From: Iphione sp. A-MEVVRFRX5 | Taxonomy: Eukaryota | Assembly (NCBI GenBank): GCA_976226885.1 | Contig: OZ320319.1 | Location: 71,610,001 to 71,674,000, forward strand | Length of the DNA: 64,000 nt | Direction of reading: 5' to 3' | Shown here: in pieces, positions 29,587 to 64,000 of the stretch | Position numbering within the stretch: position 1 is the stretch's first letter | Layout: every line of letters begins with the position of its first letter | The notes under the pieces: generated by a model | Database searches by the model: none | What the model was told of the DNA's origin: nothing | Seen by the model: only the letters and a program-made list of their open reading frames with translations | Position numbers and translations under genes: made by a program

Positions 29587-29610
29587 CTCTCTCTCCCTCC
29601 CTCCTTCCCT

Positions 29611-29669
<59 letters not shown>

Positions 29670-29785
29670 AGGTTTCCTTCATTCCCTCTTTCTCACCTCC
29701 TCTATGTTTCTATCATGTTCCTTGTTTGTTCTCCCTCAGTTCCTCCTATCTCTCTGTCTCTTTCTCACTGTCGCTCTCTCTCTCT

Positions 29786-29818
<33 letters not shown>
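29587..29818. repeat. (CT)n microsatellites and pyrimidine-rich tract
   Basis: Directly visible. Confidence 0.95.
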
Positions 29819-29821
<3 letters not shown>

Positions 29822-31340: not shown

Positions 31341-31341
31341 C

Positions 31342-31360
31342 TGGTGTCAGAAGTGGGATT
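31342..31360 (+). promoter_or_regulatory. Primer binding site complementary to the tRNA-Leu 3' end
   Basis: TGGTGTCAGAAGTGGGATT is the reverse complement of AATCCCACTTCTGACACCA, the 3' end of eukaryotic tRNA-Leu. It starts 1 nt after the LTR. Confidence 0.9.
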
Positions 31361-31371
31361 CCCCAGACAAG

Positions 31372-38082: not shown

Positions 38083-38150
38083 GGCTGGAAGGCCCAAGTG
38101 TACGCCTAAGTGTCTTCGCGACGACTGGCGCAGCAGACCGCGCGGTGCGA

Positions 38151-38900
38151 TATTTATAGACGGGTACAACTGTCGCTCGGGCCCCGTGAGAAACACAGAC
38201 ACCGCGCGGAGGGCCCGACCGGTACCTGAACGCTAGCTCGCTCGGGCCCCGTGTAGAAAACGAAAACGAGCAAAACGGGCCCGATCGATAAGCAGACTGG
38301 GAGAAAAAGGTTTTTCGTGGCAGAAAAATATTCGTAAAATTACCTACAGCGAAAAAGGGCCCGACCAAGTACGAGGTTACGCTCGGGCCCCCAAACCGGA
38401 AGAGGCCGAAAGGTAAACATCCGCCGAGCCTCGTTTTGATCTCCAGAAGCAGCAGACGAGTTTTCGTGTCAATAAAAACTGCAAAATTTAAGGAACTAAA
38501 GAAGAATCAACCCGAAGAGAAGGAGGAAATGGATCAAGACCCATCCTAGCATCATCAAGGACGTCCCTTTGAAGAGGGGGGAGGAAGCAGAAGCCAGCTT
38601 CGTGGGAGAAAAGACCGACCGGCGTTGGGGCCCGACAAGCAGAAGACCTGAGGGCCCGAGCGGAGGAGTACGCTGATCTGTGTGAGTGTAGCGAATCTTC
38701 CCTTCTGTCGGGCCCTGCCTCTGTTGTTTTTTCGTGGAGTACGCTGATCTGTAGCGAATATCCCCTTCTGTCGGGCCCTGCCTCTGTTGTTTTCGTGATG
38801 CAGCACGGGCCCGAGTGATACCGCGATTGTTGTACCTTTGGGGGGCCCGAACACCGAGCATTCGTTGTGATCCTATAGGGCCCGAGCAGCAGGGCCCGAG
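38151..38900. promoter_or_regulatory. Candidate internal bidirectional promoter with 14 GGGCCCGA motifs
   Basis: Non-coding interval between two divergent ORFs. All 14 GGGCCC hexamers in it extend to GGGCCCGA or TCGGGCCC. Confidence 0.6.
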
Positions 38901-38964
38901 CCCCAAGCCTTGTCAAGACCTCCAGTAAGTAGTTGTCTTCCCCGTACTACCTGGCCATCCCATC

Positions 38965-40932: not shown

Positions 40933-42078
40933 GTGGAGATTGTAGCCGCTACCTTAGAGACCTTTCATGGGGAAGGGACCGACACAGGGACATAGGGGTG
41001 GGGTATATTTTGTGTAATCTAACGGTAACCCCGACTGTTCTGCTGGAAGGCTAAAAGAAAGAGGACTGTACCTCCCAAAAAGAGAATTTTTGATGGATGC
41101 TGTGCTCAGGTGTTACCAGATAATGAGGTGTTGTCGGACTCTGTGGGGGGGATTTGATGTTGTTTATCCAAGAACAGAGGGAACTGGCGGATAAGGCATA
41201 CCAGGTGTTAGGTGATTACTATAAGTCGTTCTGTGATCAAGGTGTTGATTATATGTAACCACAAAGGATACTGATGACGTTTCTGTAGGGGGGGGGCAAA
41301 ATGGATATGCGCCATACTGTGATTTGAGAAAAGAAAACTACAGAAGAGGACTGTACCTCCCAAAAAGAGAATCCGTGTAAGTGAAGTGATTAGATGTTGC
41401 CGGCCTATGTGCCGCTGGTGGTGTTGACAGTACTTACCCAAGCGAGTGGTGGCAAAGCAGTGTGATACCAACATGACGGGTGTTGCCAAGCGATCAGGAG
41501 TGATTTGATTATGTACCAGTGACGACGTTAAGGATGTTAATAGTATTTACCCAAGATTATGTGCCATTGATGATGTTAAGAGTGTTGGCAGTATTTACCC
41601 AAGTGAAAAGTGGCAAAGCGGTGTGATAGCGACATGACGGGCGTTCCCAAGTGATCAGGTGTGGCTAGATTATGTGACTGTGATAGACGTTACAATTTCA
41701 CCACCCCGTTACGATCTGATCAGCTGTTGTTATCAAATATGCCACTACTACTGTTATAGCTTATCATATTACTGTGAACAATCAATTCTCGTCTTGTTGT
41801 GATTTTCTCGGGTTGTTACTCAGACAGGCATGATGGCCTTGTGTTTACCACTGTTTTGTTAAAAATTTGGTCTGTTGATGCTATCAAGTGTGATATTGTT
41901 AGAGGGGCCTATTTTCAAGTTGCTATCAAGTATGTCGTTACGATTTTCTCAGGGTGTCCCCCAGATGTTGTTTTCCTAGCTGTGATAGGTGTGGCCGCCT
42001 CGCGTTCGCCGTTGTTCTGTTATGATTTGATCCGTTAGTGCTATCAAGTGTGACATTGTTAGAGGGGCCTATTTTTTT

Positions 42079-46585: not shown

Positions 46586-46681
46586 CTAGTCGTCCTGATT
46601 ACCACGCTTGATGATATGCACAAATTTAGTGTAATTAATTTGCCCTCCTTCCACTGGGCATTCCTTCCATGTTTGCTTGAT
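46586..46681 (-). CDS. MRLC: Myosin regulatory light chain, last coding exon (IKQTWKECPVEGGQINYTKFVHIIKRGNQDD*)
   Basis: Acceptor ttttcatttcag, 96 nt ending in TAG. Matches the C-terminus of invertebrate RLCs. Confidence 0.92.
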   Translation of the reverse strand: MKQTWKECPVEGGQINYTKFVHIIKRGNQDD

Positions 46682-47581
46682 CTGAAATGAAAAGACTCAG
46701 TTAAAAAGTTGAAATCGCTTGTTTCCAGAGAGGCATGTAGATGTATTTCATATTAAACAATTTTCTAAGCTTACATCACTAGGCTAGATAAATGCAGCAA
46801 GCCCCTCGGATCCGAACAACATCCATTTCACGGGCATTTGGATAAAATAATTATCCATTATGATGGAAATATGCATTCATTAAAAAAATTCATGTGAATA
46901 GCTGAGGAATTTGGTCATTTGGGGGTAGCTTTATATGTCACTACATACACAAAAGGCCAATAAATAATGCTAAGTACTAGCAATTAAGTGCTGTACCCAT
47001 AGGCACGAACCTTCCAGACCCACCACTCTGTGCGTGAAGAGCGGGATGTCTGGCCCAGGTAGTTCATATAGAGCTATACCCATGTGCATGGACTTCCGGC
47101 ACACGCCACCTACTGTGTGCGGGATGATCGGTGTTGGTCCGGTTTTCCCGCATACCACACCACCTCATGCATGTTGGGGATAGGTGTTTGTGTGTGTATG
47201 TCTGTGGGTAGACCCTGCCACCTGTTGCAGGACAGTCCGGGAAGTCTGCACCACGTCACTTTGTGCGTGCGGATAATTCTTGTCTATGGGGATAGCGCTT
47301 TACAGTGGAAGGATCCCACCTGGATGCCAACAACATAGGCTCAGAGACGTTAAAGGGACAAATGGGAATGGGAAGGGATTGTGAGGGAACGGGTAAAGAA
47401 AGAGAGGGATGGGTGACTGGAGAAAGACAAGTACGGAGAGAAAGATAGGGAAGGAGAGGGACACAGAGGAAGAGGGAATCCTGCCCATAGATTTCGGTCT
47501 GGTCCTGCTGCATATATAGAAAGAGTCCAAAAGCAGTCATCAAAATGCCACAAAACACAATGTCTGAAGAGATTTCCTCAC

Positions 47582-47630
47582 CTCGTCTTTACTAAACTGA
47601 TCTCCAGTGTTCATGAGTAGATCTTTCACG
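47582..47630 (-). CDS. MRLC: MRLC exon ((Y)VKDLLMNTGDQFSKDE)
   Basis: Bounded by ttttcag and gtgagg, 49 nt, phase 2/0, compatible with both neighbouring exons. Confidence 0.92.
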
Positions 47631-48113
47631 CTGAAAATAAAGAATTTCATAAATATTAGCTCTATCACGAATCATTCAGCTACTACAAACTGGGACAATA
47701 TCTGTTTTTATTTCATGTATTGGGCTTTCCTGTTTTTTTCATTTTGGTCATATCCATCAAACTTCAAACAAGCCAAAAGCTTTGAAACCCCTTCCCCAAG
47801 TTATGGGCATGTCATCATAACAGTAAACAATAACACCCTTATAAAATAAAATACAGATTTTGATATTGCAGTTGTGCTCCCTCTCCGTAACCTAAGTCAT
47901 GATTTTGCAACTTATGCCACGTATACGTTTTCTGTAATTTGCTGCAGTCATACATCATGGAATTTAACCGCTGCATAAACGAACCACAGGAGGCTTGTTT
48001 ATTCCAAGTAATTACAAATTGTTAAATGTACCTGTGCTTGGATAAAAGTATTTATGCGGCACTTATTGGTCAAGATTACTTCCCATATATCTATATACTA
48101 AATTGTATGTGAT

Positions 48114-48401
48114 AGATACAGCACGAGTAGAGCACTCTACGCGATATATTACTGTATAATCATCGAGGCAATGCCAAGAGGATTATACAGTAATATATCA
48201 AGTACATGCTCTACGAGAGCTGTATCTCANNNNNNNNNNNNNNNNNNNNNNNNNNNNNNNNNNNNNNNNNNNNNNNNNNNNNNNNNNNNNNNNNNNNNNN
48301 NNNNNNNNNNNNNNNNNNNNNNNNNNNNNNNNNNNNNNNNNNNNNNNNNNNNNNNNNAGTCATGCCTCCCTTCTCTCTCTGTCTCTCTCTCATTCTCTCT
48401 G

Positions 48402-48434
<33 letters not shown>

Positions 48435-48783
48435 TAATAAGGTTGGTACTATGAGGCAACAGGTTCAGCTGAGTTCAGAGACTGCGTTGAACCCCTTGCC
48501 ACGTTTGCTCATTGTCTTTAGGCTCCGGTGCGATTTTTTTCTCTCTCTCTCTTAATGTTCGTCAGTTTTTGTACGACTCGTAGTAAAATACCGAGTCACG
48601 GCTGCAGTGTTTCTTTGGGCACTGCTGTCTGGCGCCATGATGGCACCCATGATATTATGGAATACGTGATAGATACAGCACAAGTAGAGCACTGTATGCG
48701 ATATATTACAAATAATCTTCGAGGCACAGCCGAGGAGATTATGAAGTAATATATCAAGTGCATGCTCTACGAGGGCTGTATCT
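48114..48783. repeat. Two diverged copies (48114-48227, 48671-48783) of a ~113-bp unit with inverted ends, flanking an N-gap (48230-48357) and (CT)n tracts
   Basis: Both copies run agatacagcac.agtagagca ... tgctctacgag.gctgtatct. Confidence 0.7.
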
Positions 48784-48798
48784 CACTTAAAGTCACGG

Positions 48799-48856
<58 letters not shown>

Positions 48857-49730
48857 GCAGTCTCTTGTTAGCGAGTTTAGGCCGTCCTGCTGACTCGCGG
48901 TAAAAAAAAAGCGTCATTTTCGCCGTGAGTCAGCGGCGAAATTTAAAATGGCCGCCAAATCGTCCCTAATTATCCTAGAAAGTCAAGGTTTAGCTCATTC
49001 TCTTCCTTAGATCCTCACCTTTCATATGGTGGTTGTTGCATCAAATGCGGACAAATAGAAGTGTGTGATTTTGGCTTGGAAAGATCTCTCTAGGTTGATT
49101 TTTTCACCATGACGTTTTTTTGGTATGCCCAGTCTTGTCAGTTTTGTATGAACCGCGAGTCCGTGTATTACGCGACGAAAGTTTACATGGACATAGCATC
49201 CACCATATTGGCTCTAGAGAGCCATACTATGGCTAATTGTCTTCCTCAGGCCCTTAGCTTTCATTTGATATAAAATTTATTAAAATCGGACAAGTAGAAG
49301 TGGCTGCAGTGTCTCTGACTCTCTCAATGTTTGTCAGTTTTTGTATGGTTTCGCGAGTCTGCGTATTACGCGACGATATTTACCGCAGTCTGCGTATTAA
49401 GCATAGTGTTATATTATGGAATACGTAATATATTGGTACACTTTGTCAAATAGGCACAAAGAGTGTTAAAGATCGTAGCCGTGCTTTAAATATGTGTAAA
49501 TTCATCAATGTGTGTACCAGCTGTAATCTCAGGGACTGCTCAAAACTAAAGGAAGAAATTATCTTATAGTACAAAAAAGATATTACAGACTCCTGATGTC
49601 CCCTAGACCCAGCCATACCAAAAAGGATTTAAAATATCAAATTTAACCCTGAGTTTTACTTTTACAAAAAGGCCATCCCGGAGCTTACATCTGTTACACA
49701 CATTGGTGGATTCTCAGATAGGTATCCATG

Positions 49731-50339
49731 TGTGACCAGCCAAGGAAAAAGGGTATTCCAGTGCAAACCTATGGAAACTAAAGAACATTTTTGGCTATCA
49801 TTTGGTGCAAAGATTGTGTAAATACTCCTTCTAGATCCGGAGATATCTCAATTCGAAGTTGATATAACCGACCGTTCAAAAAGATGAAATTTAATGTTTA
49901 ATGCATTCCTTGACATTCTATAGTCGACCTATCTATATGTTGTAAAATATATAAATTATTCTTAAATTTTCATTCTTTCATAGAATCTGTTCTAGAAAAG
50001 ATATTCTTGAAAGGGTTTCAGTTCTTGATAGGGCATTTCTTATATTTCTATACCATAAAGGTATTTTAAATAATCCTCAAATATTGTCACTATGGTAACT
50101 TAATGTATTCATTTATGTAAATTAGCTCATTTACATATCTGATCACATGACTGAAAATAACTTAATAAATAATAAGAATTTACAAAAACTGACTTTTGTA
50201 ACAGATTCTACAGGAAAAATTAGCAAGAAGAGTTTTTCATGACTAGATTTCCGTTTCCTTCATTTTTGGCCTCAAATAATGGTTATTTTACACTTTGACT
50301 TTTTTGCGCCGGATACCCCTTTTCCCATGGCTGGTCACA
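49731..50339. mobile_element. ~610-bp non-autonomous DNA element with ~35-bp imperfect TIRs
   Basis: tgtgaccagccaaggaaaaagggtattccagtgcaaa is matched in inverted orientation by tttgcgccggataccccttttcccatggctggtcaca. Confidence 0.6.
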
Positions 50340-51377
50340 TGTATGCATCACGTTTAATACACTCTGTTAGGGCCATCATGCCCTGCTCCTCAAATAAAAA
50401 GAAGGATATTTTCAATTTAAAACAATAGATGGCACCAATGATGGCATCGTCCTCTGTAAAGACTGTACATGTATAAGGGGAGGGACACTTAAGAACGATA
50501 CAAACTTGTATGCTTGGCATCATTTCTTGTTGCTCTTGGGTTCGAAACCATTTATTGGGTCATAATTATGCCAGGAAGTGCACCGCAAAGGCAACTTCAT
50601 TATATGTTTCTCCGCTCCAGGAGTTGAGATTGTAATCATGGTGGTTTTCATTCACAAGGATATGCATGTAATTTCTACTCTAAGTAGCCAAACTAGAAGC
50701 CCGAATGAAGATACATGTATATCAAAACTTAATGAATCTTGGTCCAAAGCATTCCCAAAAGGTTTCCTTAACAACAGTAATGAGGATGTTCGGTAAACGT
50801 TGACATGGTTTCAAGTGTTTTTCACCTGGTTAGAAAATAATCAAGAGCGAGGATATATTCTGCTATTCTCTATTGTACCTGCAGTTATTAAGTATATATA
50901 ATCCAAGTATAATGAAACCTAAAAAGAACCTGCACGTAGACTCTTACCAAAGTCCGCCATATACACATACTGGAAGTGGAGGCAAGGCCGGCCCTTCAAA
51001 AGTCACTATGCACATGTACCACCAGATGTTGTGTTGGCGAACATGAATATCCTGACTACTATTATTTTCAGGGTGCCAATGCAAGGTCACAATTGAGGTC
51101 ACCCTTCTAGGCTAGCCAGGTTACACAGTCACATTAAAGGTCGCATGTGCCTTTTAACTTTTTCTTTCTCGGGTCATAGGTAAATTGAATGAATGTAACA
51201 TCACTTCCGTAGACCTTCCATGTCGCAAATTACCAAAACCTGATGGGCAGCCTCTGTGCTCATACCATCATGCTCCGAATTGATCTAACCTTGTTTTCAG
51301 AACTAGTTAAGCCTGCCTAAATCTGGCCGAGGTTTTCCCATGGAAGACTGGAGTTGTTTATGGAGTGATGTACTTAC

Positions 51378-51456
51378 TATTCCTCGTCCAGGTAACCCTT
51401 TCCTTCTGGGTCGAACATCTTGAAAGCGTCCATCAGGGTCCTCTCAGGGTCCGTAC
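51378..51456 (-). CDS. MRLC: MRLC exon ((G)TDPERTLMDAFKMFDPEGKGYLDEE(Y))
   Basis: Bounded by ggcag and gtaagt, 79 nt, phase 1/2. Contains the GTDPE...AF.MFD RLC motif. Confidence 0.95.
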
Positions 51457-53763
51457 CTGCCAAATAACAGGCCATTAAAAAAAGACACGGGCACTCGGCC
51501 GACACACATCTGAACAGTAGACGGAGATATTTAAAAAGAAGGAGTATCACTTGTCAGATCTATCAGTAAGTGAAGACAATTTATTCCGGAATCACCATTT
51601 TTAAGTATATACTTGCCTGTGGCAGGGGGAAGATAGAACGATTTCTACACCAAATGACAACTAAATAGTTCTTGCCCAGTCAGGGACGTCTGTCATAAAT
51701 TATCACAAGGATAACATTATATTTGTAATTCAAACTAGATCAATCTACAATACTTCAGAAGTTCACTTAAAGATAATACATCTAGCCAACCCGATGCATA
51801 GGACAATAATCTATATTCTAATACTGAATAATGGATTTGGGAGAGATATTCGATGGTCCTTCATACTAATTCTTCCGTGATCTCTTTTTGAAATGGATAC
51901 TCATTTCACATAATAGTTCTGGTACCTGGAATAATGATACAGAGTTTAAATTTTAATCAATCAGAATTTCCCAATAATTTCACTTTGGATTGAAAAAAAG
52001 ATACTTGCATGGATATATATTAAGTTACCAACTTTAAAAACTACTTATAATTACACTACAAAATTAATAGGGTTTGGTTTGATAGTACGTGCGTTATCAT
52101 TTTTCTTAAGATTCTACTTGGGTTAAACTATCTTAATCATTGAGATACTATAATAGTAATTACTCATTATCAATACGCTTTAGATATACTTACGTGAAAG
52201 AAACATTGTTTCATGTGAACCTTGCCTGATGTTTTATCAGAAGGAAATTTAAAGCATACCCAGAAGAAATGAACATATATTTTTTTACAACGTTATTGGG
52301 CCTTTTTCAAATATACATATATAATGGAGAAAAATTTTATCAAAATTCAACTTATTGGCCATTTTAGGCCCGTCTGTTATGCGGCAAGTATGAATTTCGT
52401 CCGCTGGAATTGTTTATGGCGTTATAGCGCTGTCCAATGAACATGTTACTGGTCATCACAATACATTTACTCTTCTAGATATACACGTGTTCATGCCAAT
52501 TTCTTCCAAACTCTCTCTCTCTCTCGATCGATCTCTGCCTCCCTCTCATTCTCGCACTTTTTCTCTCTCCTCTTTGTCTATCTGTCTCTGTCTTTCTCTT
52601 CCTCTTCTGCAAGTCTCTATCGGAAGATGAAGCTCTTTTTCCCTGTGCTTCTGTCTGTTTATCCGTCTTTCTTCCTATTCCATGTCTCTTACTGTTTATG
52701 CTTCTCTATCTTTTACCTAAAACGTTCTGTTCACTCCCTTTCTGTATATCACATAGTAGCCAGTTGGACAACTGCGACATAACTGGCTAAGAACATTTTG
52801 ATGACATTATTCTTAAGAACATTACCTGTATTTTAAAAAACAATTATTCCCAGGAACAAATGATTCTGGCAGACTTCCAAGTGGAGCTATTTATGTGGAA
52901 GAATGGACTCTTATTGTTGTGTTTTCTCGACTCTGTTAATATATACGTAACCCCATATTGTATTTAAGTATTTTTAATCGTATTCAATAAAATATTTGCC
53001 GATGAAAATCTTTCTCAGATTTATCATGTACGTATTAGTATTTTAATATATAGTTGTGTTACGAGTTCGAAGTATTGTGTTGCAAATATATTTTCGTTAC
53101 CTTTCACATGATACAAACAGTTGATTATTTTATTTACTTTATGACCAACATATGCACATATCATGAAGTAGATGTACAGTGTATATGCATTGTGACCGTT
53201 TCGGCGGTATGGAATCAAGATTCAGTATCATTTTATTGACCTGTCTAGAGAAAATGTACACCAGGATCTTTCCTGAGCAAATCAAAGTGTAGCTGGTGCA
53301 GAGGATGGATCTTGTTTTAATATAAGGCCAAAAGAATAGGTGTGTTTCTGGTAACGACCAGCCAAAAACATAGGTAGCGAGGGGAGTATCTTTTTTTATT
53401 TTTTCCACTTTCTTCCTCTGGTTTTCAATAGTAGTAAAAACAATATGAATAATTTTGATCAATTTGCAGTTTTTTGCTGAATTTCCATGAATGTGGTTGT
53501 TTTTCTACTGAATTTACCAAAAACATGTGCTGTGAAAACATGTATCTAAGGAAATTTAGCCTTAGAAACTCTTTAGGGCCAAAAAACATTTAGGTAAGGT
53601 GAGGTTTTACTAGGTAGGGGTGGGTTGCCAGAAACACACCTATTTTTTGTTTTGGCCTAACACACATCTGAAAGATTACTTGGTGTATTTGGTAAGATTT
53701 GGTGCCCTTTTTGCATACATTGATCAGCGCTATATCTGTCGCATATCCAACCTTTGGACCTAC

Positions 53764-53865
53764 CTTTCATCTTATCACCAAAGAGGTTCAGAAACATTGT
53801 AAAGTTGAGAGGACCGGGGGCCTCATTCAGCATATCGTCGAGAACCTTCATTCCTGGCTCTCGAC
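53764..53865 (-). CDS. MRLC: MRLC alternative exon 3b ((G)[33 protein letters not shown](G))
   Basis: Bounded by ttgcag and gtaggt, 102 nt, phase 1/1. Contains [12 protein letters not shown]. Confidence 0.93.
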
Positions 53866-54911
53866 CTGCAATTAGAGGATTCACTCAGACGGTTAGAGCA
53901 AGCATGCAAGTGGGAGGGAAGAGGGAGAGGAGATTAGGGAGAAGTAGGGAGGGGGGAAGAGATCATCAGTAGGGGGGGGGGGACATACAAGGTACCAGTC
54001 TATGCGACGGGTATGTATACAAGGTCTTTGAATCCCATTGGCTCACACTCCTTTGACGTCAGCACGCGCCTGTTTGGGTTACGACAATCACACTGGAATG
54101 GAATATTTACACACGTTCATGAGTTAGGAGCAAGTTGTTTTGAAATGCCAGTCTCAATACTACGTCATTCCAACTGACTTCCGTGGAAATGGTCTACAGT
54201 AACTGAAAACATTTTATAGCTAAGTAAGAGGATACACAATTGCTGTATGCCTCCAAAGAAATGCATTAACTAATAAATGCTTTGAGTCAGACTTTATGCT
54301 TTATTTTTTAAAATATGCAAATATGAAGTGAGGTCATGCGCCATTTCCTCTAGGTCACTTGTTCTTAGCATTGATTTCTGGCTTTCAAATAGTTTACACT
54401 TGTGAGCAAGGAAATAGAGATATCTGAGCAAGAACCATGCAGATATACTCGCAATAATGAGCACTGGCCGTTACTTTAGAACAAAGCCGCCATTTTGTTA
54501 TAGACACAATGAAGTGGGACCTATATGGTATTGTGTCCCAAAACATTTAGTCCGTGATTCGCTGTCACAACATGGAAGTGGACATGTTAAATCTGACTTT
54601 AGACATGTCGAAAGATTATAAGGTTGAGATTTAGGTTCTGCATGGAAACAAGAGAATGGTAACTTGACAACGGCCGGTAATGCATCTGCTTTCCTTTCTT
54701 GCTCAGAGAGAGGTATGTTAAAGGACATCTGAGTCAGGCAGTGGGTATGAAGGGCTGGGAGAAGTGAGACACTGGTCAAGGGAATATGGGCACACTGTTT
54801 CCCAGGATGCAGGTTCGATCTCATCGGGTGGGTTACCGGGTCGCACCACCATCACACCATTCCTGTCTGTGACGTCACGTCGGGTTCACCGTGGCGTCTA
54901 GGACATCTTAC

Positions 54912-55013
54912 CGTGCAACTTCTCGCCAAAAAGCGTGAGAAAATGTGTGAAGTTCAGCTGGCCGGGCGCTTCCGCCAACATGGAGTCGATCGTCTTCGAG
55001 TCCGGCTCACGGC
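54912..55013 (-). CDS. MRLC: MRLC alternative exon 3a ((G)REPDSKTIDSMLAEAPGQLNFTHFLTLFGEKLH(G))
   Basis: Bounded by cttgcag and gtaaga, 102 nt, phase 1/1. Paralogous to 53764-53865. Confidence 0.93.
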
Positions 55014-57258
55014 CTGCAAGAATCGCCTGACTAAAGACCTTCTGGAACCTTCTAGGCCTATCAGGTTACCTTAAGAAACATCACTATTCCTTAGGTATTA
55101 GCTTTATTGCGTCATTGATGACATGTGATTAAAATGTTAGATAATCATTTATTTTTACAAAGAATACGAATTGAGCTGATTTATTATGAGCGGCAGTATT
55201 ATAAGGATTGTTTGTTTTATGCTTGCTTGATTGCTGTATGGGATCTAATGGCTACTGGCTGAAACTGTACATAGGTGAACCTGCTTAGTGTGTAAAACAG
55301 AACAGGGATCTTTTAGTACAGGAGCCAGAAAGGATTTTGACGTTGAATGCTGGTATTTTCAGGATAGATTGTGTAAACTTACCTTCAATCAAGCGCAATA
55401 TTTACCGCTCCATAATACTTAATGGTACTTAGAAGTCATTAAACTGTTAAAAATCAAGCCCCTGGTAACGGAGGTATTGGATGCAGGAAGTTGGATGACC
55501 CCTACACCTTTCAGAAATATCTAGGGCTAATTTTATTAATGCCCCGTTGGCTTTCTCAGACGAAGGGCTAATATTTCAACGGTAATAGCCAATTAGTTTG
55601 CTGCCAGTGTTGACTTGTTCTCCGGATTTTGTCAGGATTTATTATTGGAGAGGTCAGGTAGTCACTAGAAAACATCATTTGTGACCTACATATACTGCAT
55701 GTTTTTGACTCTTTGTGAATCCTGGTTTTAATTTGTCATTAGGCACCGCAAAAGCAATAGCACAAAGACCGCTCTTCTTCTGGATATGAAATGCCCAACC
55801 CCAACCTCCGGAAACAATTTCACTTTGATTAGAAACTAGGCATCGAGAGTTTAGCTTGGCAGATTAACCATTCTCCCTTACCACCAGAGCTCCCTCCACC
55901 TCAGATCGCATTCTAAGGCCTGACTTAACTACTTCTATCCACCTCAGAGGCCTAACTGTGTGCTGAACGGAGCCCCCCCCCCCTTCCTCTGTCCAAATGA
56001 GATACCATGGGCCTGATTAATATATTTTTAGGAGACCCTACTCAGTTTTAATAGAGATCATAAGAAGATATGTCAGCAAGGGGGCGTGGATGTATGTGAA
56101 GGAGAATGTGAAGAAACTCATTTAAACATATATCATGTATGAGAAGACAAAATATAAACGTGATCTGGCTTATGCGACGTTATCTACAAAATATTACTAC
56201 ACAAACACAAAAGTCTGCAAGCATCTGATGAAAGAATTACACGACTGACAAGAATTCCGAGAAGGAAAAGAGAAGCAACAGAGACCAATCATTTATATTC
56301 TACATAGAAAAAGCGAGCGGAATGTGGAGCCGGGCAAGACTGGTAGAGAAAGAGACGGAGATCGAAAATTACTAGTCTAGAAGTGAGCAGAAAAGGGAAA
56401 TGTTACAAAACAGCTTGCAAAATCGCAATGACAGAGCATGTGGTTTACAGATAACAGGGTGCAAAATACGGGTCATCACCAAACAATTTACTCTAAAAGT
56501 CTACATTCTTTACTTAGGGTTGCATAAGGATTAAAAAGGTCATATAAACATCCCTCATTTTTCAGTATTTTCCTGTTGTAGGCAATGTCATTCAAGCAGT
56601 GAACAATCTGAATAGTATGTAGATTGTACATTTCATTTCTTGATAGTGAATAATCAAATTATGAGGGATGGCTGTATGACATACAGTGTATGGCAGTCAT
56701 AGAAACTAAGAGACATGATCCATATATCCATAGGTTTAATGTATCTAGGTACACCTGACCCCTTTCTCATTATAAGCCCTAATATCTATGTAAAACCAAT
56801 ACAGATAATGCTGTTTTCTAACTATTACCCTTACATTTATGACGTGTATTTAGCATAATGATGGGATGTGCTTCCAGATCTTTATGCAGACATTATAGTG
56901 TTATCCGCACCTTGGATATATCTACCAGGTATGCTTTCTTAACCACAGCCAGAGAAAGAGGTTCCTTTGTAATCAAGTTGGGTAAACCTAACAGAAAGAA
57001 ACTTAAAAGAAACAATGAAAGATTATCAGCAAAATTCTTGTTAATCAGCAGAGAGCGACTAATAAAGTGTATTACTAAATAGGAAAGCTACGTTTTGAAT
57101 GTTTTTTCTAATGTACAATAAACCTACCTATACATATATGGGTCATGTGGCTAAGGTAGAAGAGGAACATCTAAACATACTTGACACAGATTCGAGCTAC
57201 TCCATGGTCACCTAAATTTCAAAGATATCACCACAGCAAGACCAGCTCCTCACATACT

Positions 57259-57318
57259 CAGGCCTGTAGCCAAGGGGGTATCGGGGGTATCATCCGATAC
57301 CCCCCTCCCCTAGAAATC
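57259..57318. mobile_element. Partial or internally deleted copy of the 44904-45073 MITE family
   Basis: caggcctgtagccaagggggtatcgggggtatcatccgatacccc matches the reverse complement of 45020-45073. Confidence 0.65.
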
Positions 57319-57438
57319 AATGCCTATGCACATACATAGAGATGGCCACCAGGTGTTCCACCTCTGGGGTGTAGGGGGTATCATCTGGTACCATCCAAAA
57401 CAAGTCCTGGATAGGGGCCTGCATGCTTACTCACTCAC

Positions 57439-57514
57439 CTGTTTGCTGGAACATGGCAGCCAGGTCATTGTGGTCTATAAATCCATCTCTGTTCTGGTCA
57501 ATCATTGTAAAAGC
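57439..57514 (-). CDS. MRLC: MRLC alternative EF-hand-1 exon 2c (AFTMIDQNRDGFIDHNDLAAMFQQT(G))
   Basis: Bounded by cctctag and gtgagt, 76 nt, phase 0/1. Confidence 0.93.
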
Positions 57515-58134
57515 CTAGAGGACAACAACAGGGAGGCTACGGTGAAGCTACCTCTACAAACGGGAACCTAAATACAATTGAAGTCATGTTAGGAGAATTC
57601 TAGTAGAGGTTGGTCTGATATCTTGTAAAAAGCTCAAATTTCAACTCAGTATGACATTAAGAGCTATATTGAGTTTCAGGTGGACACAATTTTTAGAATT
57701 TTTAACTGACAATGAATAAAAGATTTGGTTGTGGTCGTAGAACGGGTGCTTTAAACGGAAGAACCATGGTTTCTCAAAAAAATAGAAGGGGTAAGTTGTT
57801 AGTCATTAAATTTTATTCTAATTTAAGAAGGTAAGCTTTGAGTGTGAATCTTTAATATTTCACAAATAAATAGCTACAAAATTGTTCTGAATGGTATAAT
57901 GGTGCTGGTCAGTGGCATTAGACTGTTATGGACCATGTTGGAAATGACGTGTAACACTTGCCCAGGGCAGAAACTCTCATCAGCAAGAGCCACCATTGTC
58001 ACAAATCCTCATCCTTCTGATTTATACAACTCGCTATGAAGAAAATCGCAGAAATACTGGTCATTTCGGAAGTTTTTGCTCTAGGTGTGACGTCACTTCC
58101 AGAGGACGCTGGTCAAATACGGAATGCCACTTAC

Positions 58135-58210
58135 CCAGTTGAATATGCATTTGGGTTAAATCCATCTTATCTATAAAGCCATCATTGTTCTGATCCAGGA
58201 TTGAGAAAGC
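58135..58210 (-). CDS. MRLC: MRLC alternative EF-hand-1 exon 2b (AFSILDQNNDGFIDKMDLTQMHIQL(G))
   Basis: Bounded by gtccag and gtaagt, 76 nt, phase 0/1. Confidence 0.9.
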
Positions 58211-59171
58211 CTGGACACAGATATACACAACAGAATTGCCATTAGCGCAGTAGAACATCCCATAGCAATGCACTTCTCATCTGGCTTTGGTTCCTGCTCG
58301 AGTTGAAGTTAATCGAAAATCATTGGAATATGGATTCCTAATTTTAGTTGCGTTTCCTTACATATGTGAGCATTCATTTATTCAAGTAATTATATTCATG
58401 TTCTGGACAATTTTTCGGATTATGTCTTCAAACGGGGAATATCCGCCTTTACAAATACCGAAATACAAAATTCAGATCCGAACAATTTTCTGACATTGTC
58501 GAGTAGGTACCCATAACCATACATTTCAATGCATTTCCTACAGTAGTGTCTCATAGCTCCGATTGTTTAATTCCTTTTAACTTTCGGTCAGTGACTCAGA
58601 TGATGCCCTATGCAACATCCAGCATGAAAATGTTTTTCGCTTGTCCATGTGAGTCCATACACAGTACGTATACACAGATACGAATGCAAATTCAACATGC
58701 ATAAATACGGACTGAGTTGATATGTATGCTGTCCTGATAACTTGAATAGTCATCACTTCACATACATGCTTCAGGAACAATGCATGGACATGGGGTTTAA
58801 GCCTGAATACCTTGACTACATGTATATGATACGATGGATTTCAATGGAATCTGAGAAATGTTTAAGATACTACTGTAAGATAGGTTCATATGCAACATTT
58901 CATCAGCATCAATACTAGTAGCTACATACCATACAAACTACCATAAGAAAACAGCTATGCATTATGTTTATTGTCGCACGAATAAAGTTCTTTCATATGC
59001 CATATTTTACATATCATTTATGAGAAATTAATAAGTGCTTTTTAAAAGTAAATGGCTCCACTTCCCTGGAATTGTATTTTGCTCCAGGGAAATCTCATTA
59101 ATATATGGATGCATATAATCTTACTCTGCTCCGTAAGTAAAGAGGATTATGGTCTGTGTACATGCACTCAC

Positions 59172-59247
59172 CAAGGGTTTCAAAGATATGGCGAAGGTCA
59201 TCGCGGTCAATGAACCCGTCCCGATTCTGGTCCATCAAGGTGAAAGC
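59172..59247 (-). CDS. MRLC: MRLC alternative EF-hand-1 exon 2a (AFTLMDQNRDGFIDRDDLRHIFETL(G))
   Basis: Bounded by gtgaag and gtgagt, 76 nt, phase 0/1. Confidence 0.9.
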
Positions 59248-61057
59248 CTTCACACCATGCATGGTACAGGAAAAAGAACACAAAGCATGCAAAAGGTCAG
59301 ACGACTGGACTTCAGATTTACTGGTTATTTTTTCTCAAAGGACAGACATGTACTATTTGTTGGGAAAGAATCTTACGTTTTCCACCAAAAGGAATTGAGA
59401 AACAGAGAGAGGAGTGTTACAAAACTGCAGAAGGGAAGAGGTAGCAGAACAGAGACACAGAGAGACAAATGGAGAAAGAGAGAGAGAGGGGGGGGAGAGA
59501 GAGAGTGACGGGGAGAGACATTAAGGAAACAAAGAAAAGAGGATGAATAGCACCAAAAAACAGGTGTTTTTACGGATCAAGTAAAGGTAAAGAAATGAAA
59601 GGAGTAAGCTTGAGCAGTTTGAGGGTATGAAAAACTTCATTCTTCAAAGCAGACCTGCTAAGGACAACAAGTGTTTTTGGAAACGTTTTGACTTTATCCT
59701 TTTGAATACCAACGGGTCATTCTTGCCATCGCTTGTTGGTTGGATCACGTTAACATATGGGGAGTCTGTTTGAATTGAAGGAATATATCCTGTATTAGAG
59801 TGTCAATTTAATCCTTAATGGGGCTACCGAAATAATTAGTCAGCTCTTGTAGTTCAGTAAAAATAGATTTATTTTCAGAACTGGCCTATACCTATCATGA
59901 TGAGGCAAACAGCAACTATTTATCTCTTGGTGCATTTTCAGCGAACCTCCTCGTAAACGTAAACTGTAGTTACATAAAAAGGAACTTTTTCGCTAATATC
60001 GCACAATAGAAAACAGAAACCTGGATACATATTTCTTTGGAAATGTTATAAATTTATCCTATTGAATACCACAGGTTATGACGAAGCCCAGGTTAGTTTG
60101 AAGGATGAATCATTCAAATTGCGCGCAATATTCAAATACATTAGGACTATACGTCCATGTGTCCTTAATCGTGATGACTCTTTAATGATCCCTACACAGT
60201 AGAACTTGTCAGCCGTCTGAATGTGCATGAAAGCTAGAATCATAGCATTTTGAATATTTTCCAAAATTAAAGAAATGAATTTTGTGTGTCTATGTGATAA
60301 TTAATGCTCAGATTAATGACACACTGTGGTAAGTGCTATAAATCATGAACATGCATACAAGAATAACACAAATCAATAAGAAACCTGACTTAAATGCCCT
60401 CTGATGTAAACCTCATGATATGGAATCAGTGACTGATGGGTGCTTGAGAATCTCGTGCCATTTGGCAATATTTACTTACAACAGACTTGGTGGGTTGTCG
60501 AATAAGTTAGCAACTACGACATCCACGTCAGCTTGAGGCCAGTCATGTAAAACCACCCTTTCATTAAAACTTGCCGTGGAGTGGATGGCTTCAAACTGTG
60601 CACAGAATGTATAAACACCTGCTCTTCCAAATGGATTTATTCCAAGCAGATTATCTCGTCTCATGATCATAACTAAGTGACCACCGTACTTTCTGAAAAG
60701 GGCCATTCAGCATATCGGAAGGATGTTCGTATATGCACAGTTCCAGCTGTTTTTTACTGATCTTAAAATGCGAGATTCCATATCCTAGGCGTACATCCGG
60801 GATCAAGGCAGGCTCTGATACATCTTGCTCTCAATCACATAACCTGCTGACGTCATCGAGGGACATGGCAAACGTAGCAGGCCCTCTGAGGCTGCAGTCG
60901 GCTGCACCATTCCCCGTTGACCTTAGCGCAGTCATGGAATCGATTTTTTTAAAAAAAATACACACACAATGCACAACCAGGTTCGGAACTGAACAGTCAG
61001 CACACTCTGAAGGGAAGGAGGGAGAGGGTGGGGGTGCGTGATTTAGAGGTGGCCGAC

Positions 61058-61234
61058 CTCCTTGAACTCCTGGATCTGAGCCTGGTTGAAGAGGGCGAAC
61101 ACGTTGGATGTGGCTCGCTGCGCCCGCTTGGGCTCGGCCGGGGCCGGGGCTGGGGCATCTCCGCCCCCGCTCTCCGCCGGAGGCTCCTCGGTCTTCTCCG
61201 ACTTCTTCTTGGACTTCTTCTCTTTCTTCTTCTC
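61058..61234 (-). CDS. MRLC: MRLC alternative N-terminal exon 1b (EKKKEKK...APAPAPAEPKRAQRATSNVFALFNQAQIQEFKE)
   Basis: Bounded by tacacag and gtcggc, 177 nt, phase 0/0. Carries the canonical KRxQRATSNVF site and QIQEFKE. Confidence 0.92.
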
Positions 61235-62232
61235 CTGTGTACAATAAAATGACAATAATGTGCAGGAGGAGAGGTTTAGACTATGGCCATGTGCTCCAGC
61301 TCATCCTGGAAAAAAAACTCACCCTTTCCGAGGTGTCACATCCGGAGGTTTGGAGTTCTGTGAATTGGTGCTGTCCTGTATACAAGCATTCTTCCGAATC
61401 ATAAATCGGTAAGGGATGAAATCTGCAACGTCGTAGGGGCTGGAACTGCCATACTTCTGTGTTGAAATCCGTCATTTTAATAGGTTGGTTTAAAGCCCTG
61501 GTTCTCCATCAATTATCATAAAGAAGTTTGGAAAGTCCAGAACTGTAGCCAACATTCTACACTGGAGGCCCAATGCCTGAGTTGGCTAATGAAAAGCACT
61601 CCTGTTAAGCTTCCTGGCAGGAGATCAGTTTGCATTGATCTGAAAGTTATTAAGAGCTTGCATTAGTGGGACAAAGAAATGTCGGTTAATACAGCTTGGT
61701 TGGCGTCATCTCTTGCTTGTTGGCCTAACCTAGAATTCCTGATAAGATCATCTTGTCCACGTTGCATAATCTAAAGAGAAGAGATGCGGTTGCAACAGAC
61801 TGTTAGCTATTATTGTTGTTCACTGAAGACGTTCACGTGAAGCAAACTGCTGTATGACCTGCCATCCTCAATCTTCTACGCTGACTTCCGATTTCTACCT
61901 GAGAAACCGCATAATCTACATTAAAAATGTCTGTTAAGGGGTCTTATTGGTAACCAGTAGTTCGTGCACCATTGCAAAGAGCCGGTTATATGTGATTAAT
62001 AGTGCGCATGTGCTTGTGTTGAAGAGGAACTTTCCATTGCTGCAGGCAATGGTATGTCCCTCAAGAGACCAGTTCCTGTTGGTGATATATTCTAACCTCT
62101 AGTAACCATGCACATGTATATATCCATATATATATTGTCTGGTAAGTGGGAAATTCCAACGGTCTCCCGTTGGGGGGGGGAGCACCTGTGCTCTGGAGTA
62201 GTTTACTTCCTACAGCCGACCTATGTTTTTAC

Positions 62233-62475
62233 CTCTTTCATCTCCTGGATCTCGGCAGGAGGGAACATAGAGAAGACACTGGAGGTGGAACGGCGCTCGG
62301 CCCTCCGTGGTGGCGGCGGCGGGGGCGGCGAGGGCAGCACGTCTCGGGCGTGGCCGCTGCCCAGGGTTGCTCCAGGGGCCTCCTTCACCCCGCCTGGACG
62401 GGAGTAGGGCCTAGGGGAAGGACCGGTGGGGCTCTTGTCCCTATCCACCTGCCGGTTCCTCACCCTCTGGCTTGC
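62233..62475 (-). CDS. MRLC: MRLC alternative N-terminal exon 1a (ASQRVRNRQ...PPPPPPPRRAERRSTSSVFSMFPPAEIQEMKE)
   Basis: Bounded by gaccag and gtaaaa, 243 nt, phase 0/0. Its 3' end is homologous to exon 1b. The start-codon exon was not identified. Confidence 0.85.
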
Positions 62476-64000
62476 CTGGTCACCATTAACCAAGACAAAG
62501 TCATCAGTTATAGCAGTGGGGAAGATGACCTAAAGATTGCTGACTCTAGCAAATGGGCTAGGTACTTTTGAAAAGAAATAACCCCACCAAACTATTTCCC
62601 TGGAGTTTTATTCCCAAACATTTGCAGGCAAATGCTAGGGAGTGAGCAGTATCTCTTTCTATTATAGACTGACTTAACGTTAAACTAAACATGTAGAATG
62701 TATTTCACTACCACGAATGCAATATTAGTGAGATCGTGGAGTAGTGCTCCTACATCACTATGTGTAACTGAGATGTTTGGTAGATAATTTGACATTCTAC
62801 CTTCATTTGCAGGTTTAGTCTATCTTAAATGAAATTCTCTTGATTCGAAATGTGCGTTATATTCTCTATACACAGTTGTAGGCTTTCTCCACTAGACAAA
62901 CTAAGAGACTAAAATATTGCTGTGCCTCTCTGTCCTATCTATACATGTACATATATGTGAAAATACTGGAGAAAGTAAGTGTGGGTCCGACAAACCGTAT
63001 GATAAAAACTACTTTAACATTTGTCAGCCCAAACCTTTGCTTTAATAAGTATGATCTACTTACAATTGTGCTGATGTAGGCATACTGGGCAGACATACTC
63101 CTCAAGATGGCCAATTGTACAATGTTAACGTCAAAGAGTCAAGAGTGACTTGTATGCAAGTGCGCAACTTTGAAACCGGGGAGATGGTCACTGCGCAACT
63201 ATCTCATGTTTAAATCTTATAACAATACCTTCAGACCCTGGGGATTTGGTGGTTGTAGCCAAGATGGGCTTTGTTTGAGAACTTGTATGTCTATTGGGAG
63301 TATTGCTTCAGGACAATCAGCATTTAATTCATACTTTGACCTGGTCAGATAATGAGGTCTGGTAGAAGGAATAGATGGACTAGACTTAGCGCATCTTAAA
63401 CTATCCTATGTGGAATAAGAAACACATGGAAACAGGAGACAGACAGACAGGCAGGTACTGAGACAGAGAAGCAAAGAAAAATAGAGAAAAGGAACCTAGA
63501 CGCAGAGAGAAATAAGGGCGAATTGGGGGCAGATAGGGGGAGATTAAGGCCATCTGGTGGAGTGGAAAATCTGTCCAGGGTTTCGGTTAGTCTTCAGGGT
63601 TCGGACGAACCCTCCTCGAAACATAACGTCCACCCACATACATCTGTATTTAGTTTTTTTGTCGTTGATGTCCTTCTTGACCTCATAATAAACTCGGCCA
63701 ATATAATTGCACTCCGTTTAGTCTATCCGCTCTCGTTCTGACCTAGGCGGGAACTATTCACTCGAATGCCTGGCCTCATACCAGCACCTCACCTTCACCA
63801 TAGTGTTAAGCCGCTCTCGACAGATGTTCACCTTTAGTATACATTAGTATACACCTTTATCTACCAGGTAACAGGTTTCATCCTTGGTAAAGAAATTATC
63901 AACCTATCAATGACTTCCAATACCGTTGGTATTCGAATTCCCTCATTGTCGAAAGGATATGCAAAGTAATTAAAATGTTTTTACTCTTATTTAATATTCC

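What the first reader, a model, noticed from the sequence alone, without database searches (positions are those of the whole stretch)
46586..62475. Myosin regulatory light chain gene with duplicated alternative exons at three consecutive positions (2 x 3 x 2)
Seen: two N-terminal exons (62233-62475, 61058-61234), three 76-nt EF-hand-1 exons (59172-59247, 58135-58210, 57439-57514) and two 102-nt exons (54912-55013, 53764-53865), then single copies of the last three exons. All have GT-AG boundaries, matching phases and no stops. Up to 12 isoforms are possible, or a few coupled ones, which would act like several RLC paralogues sharing one C-terminal lobe. Alternative RLC splicing is known in some invertebrates; whether this three-tier layout has been described needs a literature check.
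Basis: partly seen in the sequence, partly recalled or inferred. Interest (0 to 1): 0.75.

Follow-up and report, generated by a model that had tools for sequence, protein, structure and literature searches.

The report
Worm myosin light chain, swappable exons
An annelid worm's muscle myosin regulatory light chain gene carries 2, 3 and 2 interchangeable copies of its first three coding exons, all kept intact by selection. One gene can therefore build up to twelve versions of the half of the protein that controls the motor, a layout that is real and shared with related worms but is a variation on a known theme.

Summary
On the minus strand lies a myosin regulatory light chain (RLC) gene with two N-terminal exons (243 and 177 nt), three 76-nt EF-hand-1 exons, two 102-nt exons and single last three exons. 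All have GT-AG borders and all 12 combinations stay in frame. The N gap (48230-48357) lies inside the intron between the 79-nt and 49-nt exons, and the codon split across that intron reads as in relatives, so no coding sequence is missing.

The organism is an annelid. The same 2x3x2 layout occurs in a closer relative (a Logan contig) and in Capitella teleta, which rules out misassembly. Between window and relative only the exons align. Synonymous sites are saturated while dN is 0.02-0.22 for every alternative exon, so none evolves neutrally.

Transcript pairs in relatives differ by exactly one exon (A1/A3 type, B1/B2 type). Lingula RefSeq isoforms combine two N exons with three B exons. No transcript with an A2-type or annelid N1-type exon was found, and no RNA run of this species was listed.

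Only the 76-nt cluster is forced to be exclusive by reading frame. I found no paper describing this RLC layout, but it fits the known pattern of mutually exclusive exons in lophotrochozoan muscle genes. The scan had not noted this gene before.

The parts
62233..62475 (-). N1: alternative N-terminal exon, 243 nt, phase 0-0. It has a conserved head (ASQRVRNRQ), a Pro/Ser-rich middle, and a tail with the phosphorylatable Ser motif and the start of helix A (RRSTSSVFSMF..EIQEMKE).
   Evidence: AG/GT borders and open frame. The orthologous exon in L004 (1698-1913) has an identical 9-aa head and a 76% identical tail, and Capitella L001 11046-11168 has a short 41-aa version. dN 0.05-0.17 with saturated dS. 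Best PDB hit is the tarantula striated RLC.
61058..61234 (-). N2: canonical N-terminal exon, 177 nt, phase 0-0. It has a Lys/Glu- and Pro/Ala-rich extension plus KRAQRATSNVFALFNQAQIQEFKE.
   Evidence: The tail is 100% identical in L004 and in many annelid transcripts. PDB hits are RLCs.
59172..59247 (-). A1: EF-hand-1 exon copy 1, 76 nt, phase 0-1.
   Evidence: The L004 orthologue is 84-85% identical. A1-type exons are used in transcripts of relatives (P0289, P0175, P0182).
58135..58210 (-). A2: EF-hand-1 exon copy 2, 76 nt. It is the most divergent copy, but all cation-ligand positions of the loop are kept (DQNNDGFIDKMD).
   Evidence: The L004 orthologue is 80-81% identical, with 83% nt identity over 89 nt while the introns do not align. 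dN/dS about 0.10. Best PDB hits are RLC EF-hand 1. No transcript with this exon type was found.
57439..57514 (-). A3: EF-hand-1 exon copy 3, 76 nt. This is the type found in most annelid RLC transcripts.
   Evidence: The L004 orthologue is 88% identical.
54912..55013 (-). B1: 102-nt exon (phase 1-1) for the linker, helix C and the start of helix D (..APGQLNFTHFLTLFGEKLH). This is the type in most annelid transcripts.
   Evidence: It is 91% identical in L004 with dN/dS 0.03. PDB hits map to RLC residues about 63-94.
53764..53865 (-). B2: alternative 102-nt exon (..[19 protein letters not shown]).
   Evidence: It is 70% identical in L004 with dN/dS 0.31. B2-type exons are used in transcripts of relatives (P0157, P0175, P0182). 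PDB hits.
51378..51456 (-). Constitutive exon E5, 79 nt (GTDPERTLMDAFKMFDPEGKGYLDEE-).
   Evidence: single copy.
48230..48357 (.). Assembly gap, inside the E5-E6 intron.
   Evidence: It is flanked by a GA-rich simple repeat. The split codon across this intron matches homologues.
47582..47630 (-). Constitutive exon E6, 49 nt (-VKDLLMNTGDQFSKDE).
46586..46681 (-). Last coding exon E7 with the stop codon (IKQTWKECPVEGGQINYTKFVHIIKRGNQDD*).
   Evidence: Best PDB hits are the C-termini of scallop and squid RLCs.

Best explanation
[quoted passage not shown] Its N-terminal lobe is encoded by three successive clusters of tandemly duplicated exons that are spliced as alternatives, one per cluster. Cluster N (N1/N2) gives the N-terminal extension, the phosphorylatable serine and the start of helix A. 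Cluster A (A1/A2/A3) gives the divalent-cation EF-hand 1 and helix B. Cluster B (B1/B2) gives helices C-D. The C-terminal lobe (three exons) is constant. One gene can thus make several RLCs, up to 12, with different regulatory or neck-binding N-lobes, most likely for different muscle types or stages. This parallels the many mutually exclusive exon clusters of the annelid myosin heavy chain gene.

Shown: the exon anatomy, its conservation in related annelids, purifying selection on all seven alternative exons, and one-exon-swap transcripts for A1/A3 and B1/B2 types in relatives. Also shown: including two or none of the 76-nt exons shifts the frame into an early stop.

Inferred: that this species uses all seven exons, that choices are tissue-specific, how exclusivity is enforced in clusters N and B (their lengths are multiples of three), and what the functional differences are.
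For: Anatomy and frames.

RLC identity.

Same layout elsewhere. L004 has N1, N2, A1, A2, A3, B1, B2, E5 in the same order within 6 kb. Capitella teleta L001 has N1-like, N2, three A exons, B1 and B2. Paralvinella has 2 A and 2 B exons, and Lamellibrachia has 2 B exons.

Selection. Only exons align between window and L004. For every alternative exon dS is high (0.71-1.67) or saturated and dN is 0.02-0.22.

Transcripts. P0166 and P0289 are identical except residues 70-90 (A3 versus A1 type). P0157 and P0163 are identical except residues 93-124 (B2 versus B1). Capitella P0165 and P0175 differ only in the A and B exons, and all four of those exons are present in L001.

Combinations seen in relatives: A3+B1, A3+B2, A1+B1 and A1+B2.

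N-exon alternatives used one at a time in Lingula RefSeq isoforms.

Frame test: A1+A2, A2+A3, all three, or no A exon give a premature stop. B1+B2, no B, and N1+N2 stay in frame.

Heavy-chain parallel: PMC3912159.
Against: There are no RNA data for this species; none was listed.

Among about 150 annelid-type RLC transcripts or proteins inspected, none carries an A2-type exon or an annelid N1-type exon. A metagenome scan for N1 and a pattern scan for A2 found nothing.

The start-codon exon is not in the window, so it is unknown whether N1 and N2 share a first exon.

No conserved RNA pairing or other exclusivity mechanism was found for clusters N and B.

The orthology of the third A copy between Capitella and this species is unresolved: the order differs and the exon tree is weak.
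Confidence: 0.8

Rival explanations
1. Only part of the array is functional. N2, A1, A3, B1 and B2 are used, while A2 and/or N1 are silent relics or rarely spliced decoy exons that do not contribute protein.
For: No transcript with an A2-type or annelid N1-type exon was seen in the top hits of the three protein searches (120 listed per search) or among the cluster members read. Scans for them were blank. A2 is the most divergent copy.
Against: A2 and N1 keep their open frame, exact length, phase and splice sites in the window and in L004, while the surrounding introns have lost all alignable similarity. A2 has dN/dS about 0.10. The N1 head is 9/9 identical although 30% of its nucleotides differ. 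An N1-type exon with the same head motif is present in Capitella, Lineus and Lingula, and is used in Lingula RefSeq isoforms X1/X2. A2 keeps every EF-hand ligand position.
Confidence: 0.12
2. The first tier is not splicing of two cassette exons after a shared first exon. It is a choice between alternative promoters or first exons, each leading to N1 or N2. On this view the gene has two true mutually exclusive clusters (A, B) plus an alternative 5' end.
For: Lingula isoforms with the N1-type exon start M-ASKARVQ, while those with the N2-type exon start MAED-KVKK, which implies different upstream exons. The start-codon exon was not found upstream of N1 in the window or in L004.
Against: In Capitella a single small ATG exon (MGEEK) lies 1 kb upstream of both the N1-like and N2 exons. 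N1 has an ordinary acceptor and no in-frame ATG before its conserved tail.
Confidence: 0.35
3. The apparent array is an assembly artefact that has merged separate RLC paralogues, or collapsed haplotypes, into one locus.
For: There is an assembly gap within the gene span.
Against: The gap is in a different intron, 3' of all duplicated exons. The same order of seven alternative exons is found on a single short-read contig of a related species and in the Capitella assembly. The copies are 48-64% identical, far too divergent for haplotypes. Only one copy of exons E5-E7 exists in 64 kb.
Confidence: 0.02

Closest known systems
Lingula anatina (brachiopod) 'myosin regulatory light chain, smooth muscle' isoforms X1-X6 in RefSeq
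   Same: This is an orthologous lophotrochozoan RLC gene. Two alternative N-terminal exons, the 5' one with the same AS.(A/R)RV head motif, combine with alternative 102/105-nt B exons, and the C-lobe is constant.
   Different: Lingula has one EF-hand-1 exon and three B exons, a 2 x 1 x 3 layout. Its B copies look lineage-specific. It is known only as automatic annotation; I found no paper on it.
Mutually exclusive exon clusters of muscle myosin heavy chain genes (Drosophila Mhc; Capitella Mhc with seven clusters; Kollmar and Hatje 2014, PMC3912159)
   Same: Tandem exon duplication within a single sarcomeric gene replaces gene families. Several clusters sit in one gene, they are old, and they are gained and lost by lineage. 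The protein is the binding partner of this RLC.
   Different: It concerns the motor and rod of the heavy chain. That paper does not mention light chains (0 occurrences).
Scallop RLC isoforms (striated type and a catch-muscle-specific phosphorylatable type; Morita and Kondo 1982, as cited in PMC12040844)
   Same: These are lophotrochozoan muscle-type-specific RLC isoforms that differ in regulatory properties. From my own memory, not checked here: Placopecten RLC isoforms were attributed to alternative splicing of one gene.
   Different: They were described as proteins or cDNAs with two or three isoforms. No three-cluster exon layout was reported. The gastropod locus I checked (Haliotis) has only the N pair duplicated.
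Vertebrate fast skeletal MYL1 (MLC1f/MLC3f) gene (own knowledge)
   Same: It is an EF-hand myosin light chain whose N-terminal region is varied through alternative 5' exons, including a mutually exclusive pair.
   Different: It is an essential, not a regulatory, light chain. There are two isoforms only, driven by two promoters, and the EF-hand exons are not duplicated.
Dscam-type multi-cluster combinatorial mutually exclusive splicing (PMC3364881 lists three variable clusters)
   Same: Three successive clusters, each supplying one exon, give a product number equal to the product of the cluster sizes.
   Different: The numbers here are tiny (2 x 3 x 2). No docking/selector RNA elements were found here.

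Membership tests
Myosin regulatory light chain (EF-hand superfamily, myosin II RLC) | Sequence similarity over the whole length to bona fide RLCs | tested here: met
   N2-A3-B1 is 82% identical over 157 aa to P0166 and 70-80% identical to Riftia, Lamellibrachia and Capitella RLCs. Each exon hits RLC chains best in the PDB.
Myosin regulatory light chain (EF-hand superfamily, myosin II RLC) | N-terminal phosphorylatable Ser in a basic context followed by (N/S)VF | tested here: met
   N2 has KRAQRATSNVF, identical to the smooth/non-muscle RLC motif. N1 has RRAERRSTSSVF. Phosphorylation itself was not tested.
Myosin regulatory light chain (EF-hand superfamily, myosin II RLC) | One canonical 12-residue divalent-cation loop in EF-hand 1 | tested here: met
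   All three A copies read D-Q-N-x-D-G-F-I-D-x-x-D, with acidic or amide side chains at loop positions 1, 3, 5, 9 and 12.
Cluster of mutually exclusive exons arisen by tandem exon duplication | Neighbouring exons of equal length, equal phase, compatible splice sites and homologous sequence | tested here: met
   The A exons are 76/76/76 nt and the B exons are 102/102 nt, with identical phases and GT-AG borders. The N1 and N2 tails are homologous but the exon lengths differ (243 versus 177 nt).
Cluster of mutually exclusive exons arisen by tandem exon duplication | Transcripts contain exactly one exon of the cluster | tested here: inconclusive
   This could not be tested in this species. In relatives it is met for A1/A3 and B1/B2 types and for the N pair in Lingula. 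It was not observed for A2 or for the annelid N1.
Cluster of mutually exclusive exons arisen by tandem exon duplication | A mechanism that prevents joint inclusion or skipping | tested here: inconclusive
   Cluster A: any number of exons other than one gives a frameshift and an early stop. Clusters B and N: joint inclusion or skipping stays in frame. The introns between copies are long in the window (998 and 1046 nt), and no conserved pairing elements were found.
Cluster of mutually exclusive exons arisen by tandem exon duplication | Each copy maintained by purifying selection | tested here: met
   In the window versus L004 comparison the exons are 70-100% identical in protein, dS is 0.7 to saturated, and the introns are unalignable.
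Striated-muscle (sarcomeric) RLC clade as opposed to smooth/non-muscle RLC | Placement in the sarcomeric-type clade of an RLC phylogeny | not tested
   Only names given by sources point that way (Lamellibrachia 'striated muscle, 25 kDa'), while RefSeq names the Lingula and mollusc relatives 'smooth muscle'. No whole-protein tree was built.

The most novel reading that the evidence does not exclude
The three clusters form a coordinated code. Exon choices in the RLC N-lobe are matched, muscle by muscle, to the mutually exclusive exon choices of the annelid myosin heavy chain. The so-far unseen N1 and A2 exons would define a specialised RLC with a different regulatory mode, such as another kinase input through its Pro/Ser-rich extension or altered Mg/Ca handling, in a rare muscle or stage. 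That would make annelid myosin a holoenzyme assembled combinatorially from two multi-cluster genes.
Probability: 0.25. Interest if true: 0.65.

Novelty: new variant of a known kind. Interest (0 to 1): 0.5.

Why it matters
Animals usually vary their regulatory light chains through separate genes: vertebrate MYL2, MYL9, MYL11 and MYL12, or the two tarantula RLCs. Here, and in several lophotrochozoans, one gene varies the whole N-terminal lobe in three modules while holding the C-lobe constant. The N-lobe carries the phosphorylation site and the Mg/Ca site, and it grips the heavy-chain hook at the head-tail junction.

This is a natural domain-swap experiment. Each module has two or three versions tested by evolution, so it points to which RLC segments tune regulation. 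It complements the known multi-cluster heavy chain gene of annelids. The comparison across phyla (N pair in annelid, brachiopod, nemertean and mollusc; B copies in annelid and brachiopod; A copies in annelids only; six copies of the next exon in one relative) shows a gene that repeatedly gains alternative exons.

It also has an annotation consequence. Gene models that include both B exons (Paralvinella) or several N exons (Biomphalaria) are probably wrong.

Tried and rejected
- RNA evidence for this species: the look-up of sequencing runs listed no run, so read laying could not be used.
- Full-length spliced isoforms could not be given to the search tools by reference, and I did not type them. 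Instead I searched with exon B2 by reference and continued from the protein ids found.
- Search for N1-containing transcripts or loci in metagenome contigs with a three-species N1 alignment: 599 pattern matches, none confirmed.
- Degenerate pattern for the A2 exon in metagenome contigs: no match. I wrote that pattern with Leu where the window has Phe, so it was too narrow. The blank says little.
- Start-codon exon: the pattern MGE... as in Capitella is absent from 61235-64000 and from L004 upstream. A looser scan gives only one weak candidate, MVK at 63793-63801, with no counterpart in L004.
- Docking/selector-type RNA pairing: inverted-repeat scans of the window and of L004 gave only AT-rich or simple-repeat pairs, none conserved.
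- The idea that the two GTGACGTCAC palindromes pair as RNA to couple A2 with B2 is not supported. The placement differs in L004, and there the motif sits in a cluster of E-box, CRE and ETS-like DNA motifs.
- Microsynteny with the 5'-nucleotidase gene that follows the RLC gene in Capitella and Lingula: no match in the window.
- Contigs of P0002 and P0005 (further tandem B exons): DNA was not retrievable.
- Ravaux et al. 2001 (Riftia RLC gene, Gene 263:141) is not held. From memory it analyses a cDNA, not exon duplicates.
- Exon trees of 26 and 34 columns resolve little. Only the window-L004 pairs, a weak A3 group and the B1/B2 grouping appear.


Full report
**1. The observation**

Reading the minus strand at the stated coordinates shows every claimed exon with an AG acceptor, a GT donor and an open frame.

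| Exon | Coordinates | Length |
|---|---|---|
| N1 | 62233-62475 | 243 nt |
| N2 | 61058-61234 | 177 nt |
| A1 | 59172-59247 | 76 nt |
| A2 | 58135-58210 | 76 nt |
| A3 | 57439-57514 | 76 nt |
| B1 | 54912-55013 | 102 nt |
| B2 | 53764-53865 | 102 nt |
| E5 | 51378-51456 | 79 nt |
| E6 | 47582-47630 | 49 nt |
| E7 (with stop) | 46586-46681 | 96 nt |

I located the last three exons. All 12 N x A x B combinations give an uninterrupted frame ending at the same stop. A deliberately permissive tblastn of each exon peptide against all 64 kb finds exactly these copies and no others, and only one copy each of E5-E7.

**2. The gap**

The run of N at 48230-48357 lies in the 3.7-kb intron between E5 and E6, next to a GA-rich simple repeat. 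E5 ends with two bases (TA) and E6 starts with C, giving Tyr. The resulting EEY-VKDLL matches all relatives. So the gap interrupts no coding sequence. I cannot exclude that it hides one more exon copy. I did not try to fill it.

**3. What the gene is**

- The N2 exon hits tarantula striated-muscle RLC and vertebrate smooth/non-muscle RLCs.
- The last exon hits scallop and squid RLC C-termini.
- A2, N1, B1 and B2 all hit RLC chains best, at RLC residues about 5-36 (N), 36-57 (A) and 63-94 (B).
- A search of 1.8 billion representatives with exon B2 gave protein ids. From these, full-length relatives were found.
- The named relatives are annelid RLCs: Capitella teleta, Riftia, Lamellibrachia, Paralvinella.
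- The closest protein (P0166) is 82% identical to the N2-A3-B1 product, and 100 of 136 full-length hits match that combination best.

The window therefore comes from an annelid. This agrees with notes on other windows of this genome. N2-A3-B1 is the canonical form.

**4. Are the extra copies real, conserved exons?**

Four genomic loci of relatives were fetched first.

- **L004**, a 7.9-kb Logan contig from a closer relative, carries N1, N2, A1, A2, A3, B1, B2 and E5 in the same order within 6 kb. Lengths and phases of the A and B exons are the same. The N1 exon has an identical nine-residue head and a 76% identical tail.
- **Capitella teleta** (L001) has an N1-like exon of 41 aa, N2, three 76-nt A exons, B1 and B2.
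- **Paralvinella** has two A and two B exons, and **Lamellibrachia** has two B exons.

At the DNA level only the exons align between the window and L004. The introns share nothing detectable. Per-exon Nei-Gojobori estimates give saturated or high dS and dN of 0.02-0.22 for every alternative exon, including N1 and A2. Within the window the copies are old: 48-64% protein identity, with dS saturated for the A copies and about 2 for the B and N pairs.

**5. Are they used as alternatives?**

No RNA run of this species was listed, so this rests on relatives. Three protein pairs from spliced contigs differ by exactly one exon.

| Pair | Difference | Exon types |
|---|---|---|
| P0166 / P0289 | residues 70-90 only | A3 versus A1 |
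| P0157 / P0163 | residues 93-124 only | B2 versus B1 |
| P0165 / P0175 | A and B exons only | A3+B1 versus A1+B2 |

- P0157 and P0163 are Capitella-like sequences filed under the Ancora sagittata transcriptome in EukProt. That Ancora is a gregarine parasite of Capitella, which would make them host reads, is my own knowledge.
- P0165 and P0175 are from Capitella teleta. All four of their A and B exons are present in L001.

Across relatives all four A1/A3 x B1/B2 combinations occur, so these two choices are not strictly coupled. No transcript with an A2-type exon or an annelid N1-type exon was seen. Two metagenome scans were blank, the second with a pattern I wrote too narrowly.

The N1 type is nevertheless old. 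Exons with the same head motif and the same position 5' of the N2-type exon exist in Lingula and Lineus, and an N1-like exon lies 5' of N2 in Haliotis. Lingula RefSeq isoforms X1/X2 use the N1 type, while X4/X6 use the N2 type.

**6. Mechanism**

- The three clusters encode the N-terminal lobe in three modules. N gives the extension, the phospho-serine and the start of helix A. A gives EF-hand 1 with all ligand positions kept in all three copies, plus helix B. B gives helices C-D. The C-lobe is constant.
- For cluster A, the reading frame enforces one exon per mRNA. Two, three or no A exons give a stop within a few codons, and such mRNAs would be expected to be degraded (inference).
- For clusters B and N, joint inclusion or skipping stays in frame, so exclusivity must come from splicing control. 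I found no conserved pairing elements.
- The only non-coding conservation is about 25 nt upstream of A3 and of B2.
- It is open whether N1 and N2 follow one shared first exon (as the Capitella locus suggests) or different first exons (as the Lingula isoform N-termini suggest). The start exon is not in the window.

**7. Wider distribution**

| Taxon / locus | Layout found |
|---|---|
| Lingula | N x2, A x1, B x3 |
| Haliotis | N x2 only |
| Lineus | N x2 and two copies of the E6-type exon |
| L005 (unidentified relative) | N x2, A x2, B x2, six copies of the E5-type exon in 4.4 kb |
| Tara metagenome contigs (L006, L007) | two B-type exons |

Tandem alternative exons in this RLC gene are therefore a general, repeatedly renewed feature of lophotrochozoans. 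On this small sample the A cluster appears only in annelids.

**8. Comparison with what is known**

- Mutually exclusive exon clusters in muscle genes are classic. Capitella Mhc has seven clusters (PMC3912159), but that paper does not treat light chains.
- Scallop catch muscle has two RLC isoforms, one with a phosphorylation site (PMC12040844).
- Brunet et al. 2016 treat annelid striated and smooth RLC as separate genes and do not mention alternative exons.
- Six full-text searches found no description of a multi-cluster RLC gene.
- RefSeq's automatic annotation of Lingula already lists the N x B isoforms.

I therefore rate this as a new variant of a known kind. It is a solid, conserved three-cluster layout in an EF-hand light chain, moderately interesting, and not a new principle.

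**9. Limits**

- There is no expression evidence in this species.
- A2 and N1 are supported by conservation only.
- The exon trees are weak.
- The species of the window, L004 and L005 are unknown.

Noticed in passing
window 58087-58096 and 54869-54878: The 10-nt palindrome GTGACGTCAC (a full CRE-like site) occurs only twice in the 64 kb: 39 nt downstream of exon A2 and 34 nt downstream of exon B1. One of 100 shuffles reaches this count. L004 has GACGTCAC 39 nt after its B1 and 48 nt before its B2. It could be an intronic enhancer or a splicing element; undecided.
   Followed up: partly
L004:6670-6743: The B1-B2 intron of the relative holds a dense, partly palindromic cluster of CACGTG, GCGTCACATG (x2) and GACGTCAC motifs, flanked by CCGGAAGT/ACTTCCGG. 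It looks like a promoter or enhancer module inside the intron.
   Followed up: no
L005:2196-4086: An unidentified relative (Logan contig of ERR14986678) has six tandem copies of the E5-type exon (start of the C-lobe, GTDPE...), besides two N, two A and two B exons, all within 4.4 kb. That is a fourth cluster, absent from the window.
   Followed up: partly
L010:13862-13909 and 15514-15555: The nemertean Lineus longissimus RLC gene has two copies of the E6-type exon and an N1-like exon starting SQQRVQRRRV.
   Followed up: no
P0155 (Paralvinella), P0295 (Biomphalaria): The deposited Paralvinella protein contains B1 and B2 in tandem. The Biomphalaria RefSeq isoform X2 contains three N-type segments in tandem. 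These are probably gene-model artefacts of in-frame alternative exons.
   Followed up: partly
P0165; P0157/P0163: A protein filed at NCBI as a Clostridium perfringens hypothetical protein is a Capitella teleta RLC isoform: its A and B exon segments are identical to exons in L001. The EukProt 'Ancora sagittata' set contains Capitella-like RLC transcripts, presumably host contamination.
   Followed up: partly
window 63793-63801 (minus strand): ATG GTG AAG followed by GTGAG, with A at -3 and G at +4, is the only short ATG-exon candidate upstream of N1. It has no counterpart in L004, so it is weak.
   Followed up: partly
window 48066-48182 and 48599-48766 (minus strand): Similar sequence (translating to ..IYR.(Q/E)CST.AVSITY..) lies on both sides of the assembly gap, together with GA-rich simple repeats. 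A repeated element probably caused the gap.
   Followed up: no
window 53331-53355 and 53624-53648: A 25-nt inverted repeat, 92% complementary and 268 nt apart, lies in the intron just downstream of B2. It may mark the ends of a small MITE-like insertion.
   Followed up: no
window about 28000-42000: A GC-rich block (0.47-0.60 against about 0.40 elsewhere) lies downstream of the RLC gene. Earlier notes of the scan call part of it (36798-40932) a Gypsy retrotransposon. I did not examine it.
   Followed up: no
L001:36737-44532, L008:18702-21426: In both Capitella and Lingula a 5'-nucleotidase (PF05761) gene lies tail to tail just downstream of the RLC gene. No such gene is detectable in the window.
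   Followed up: partly
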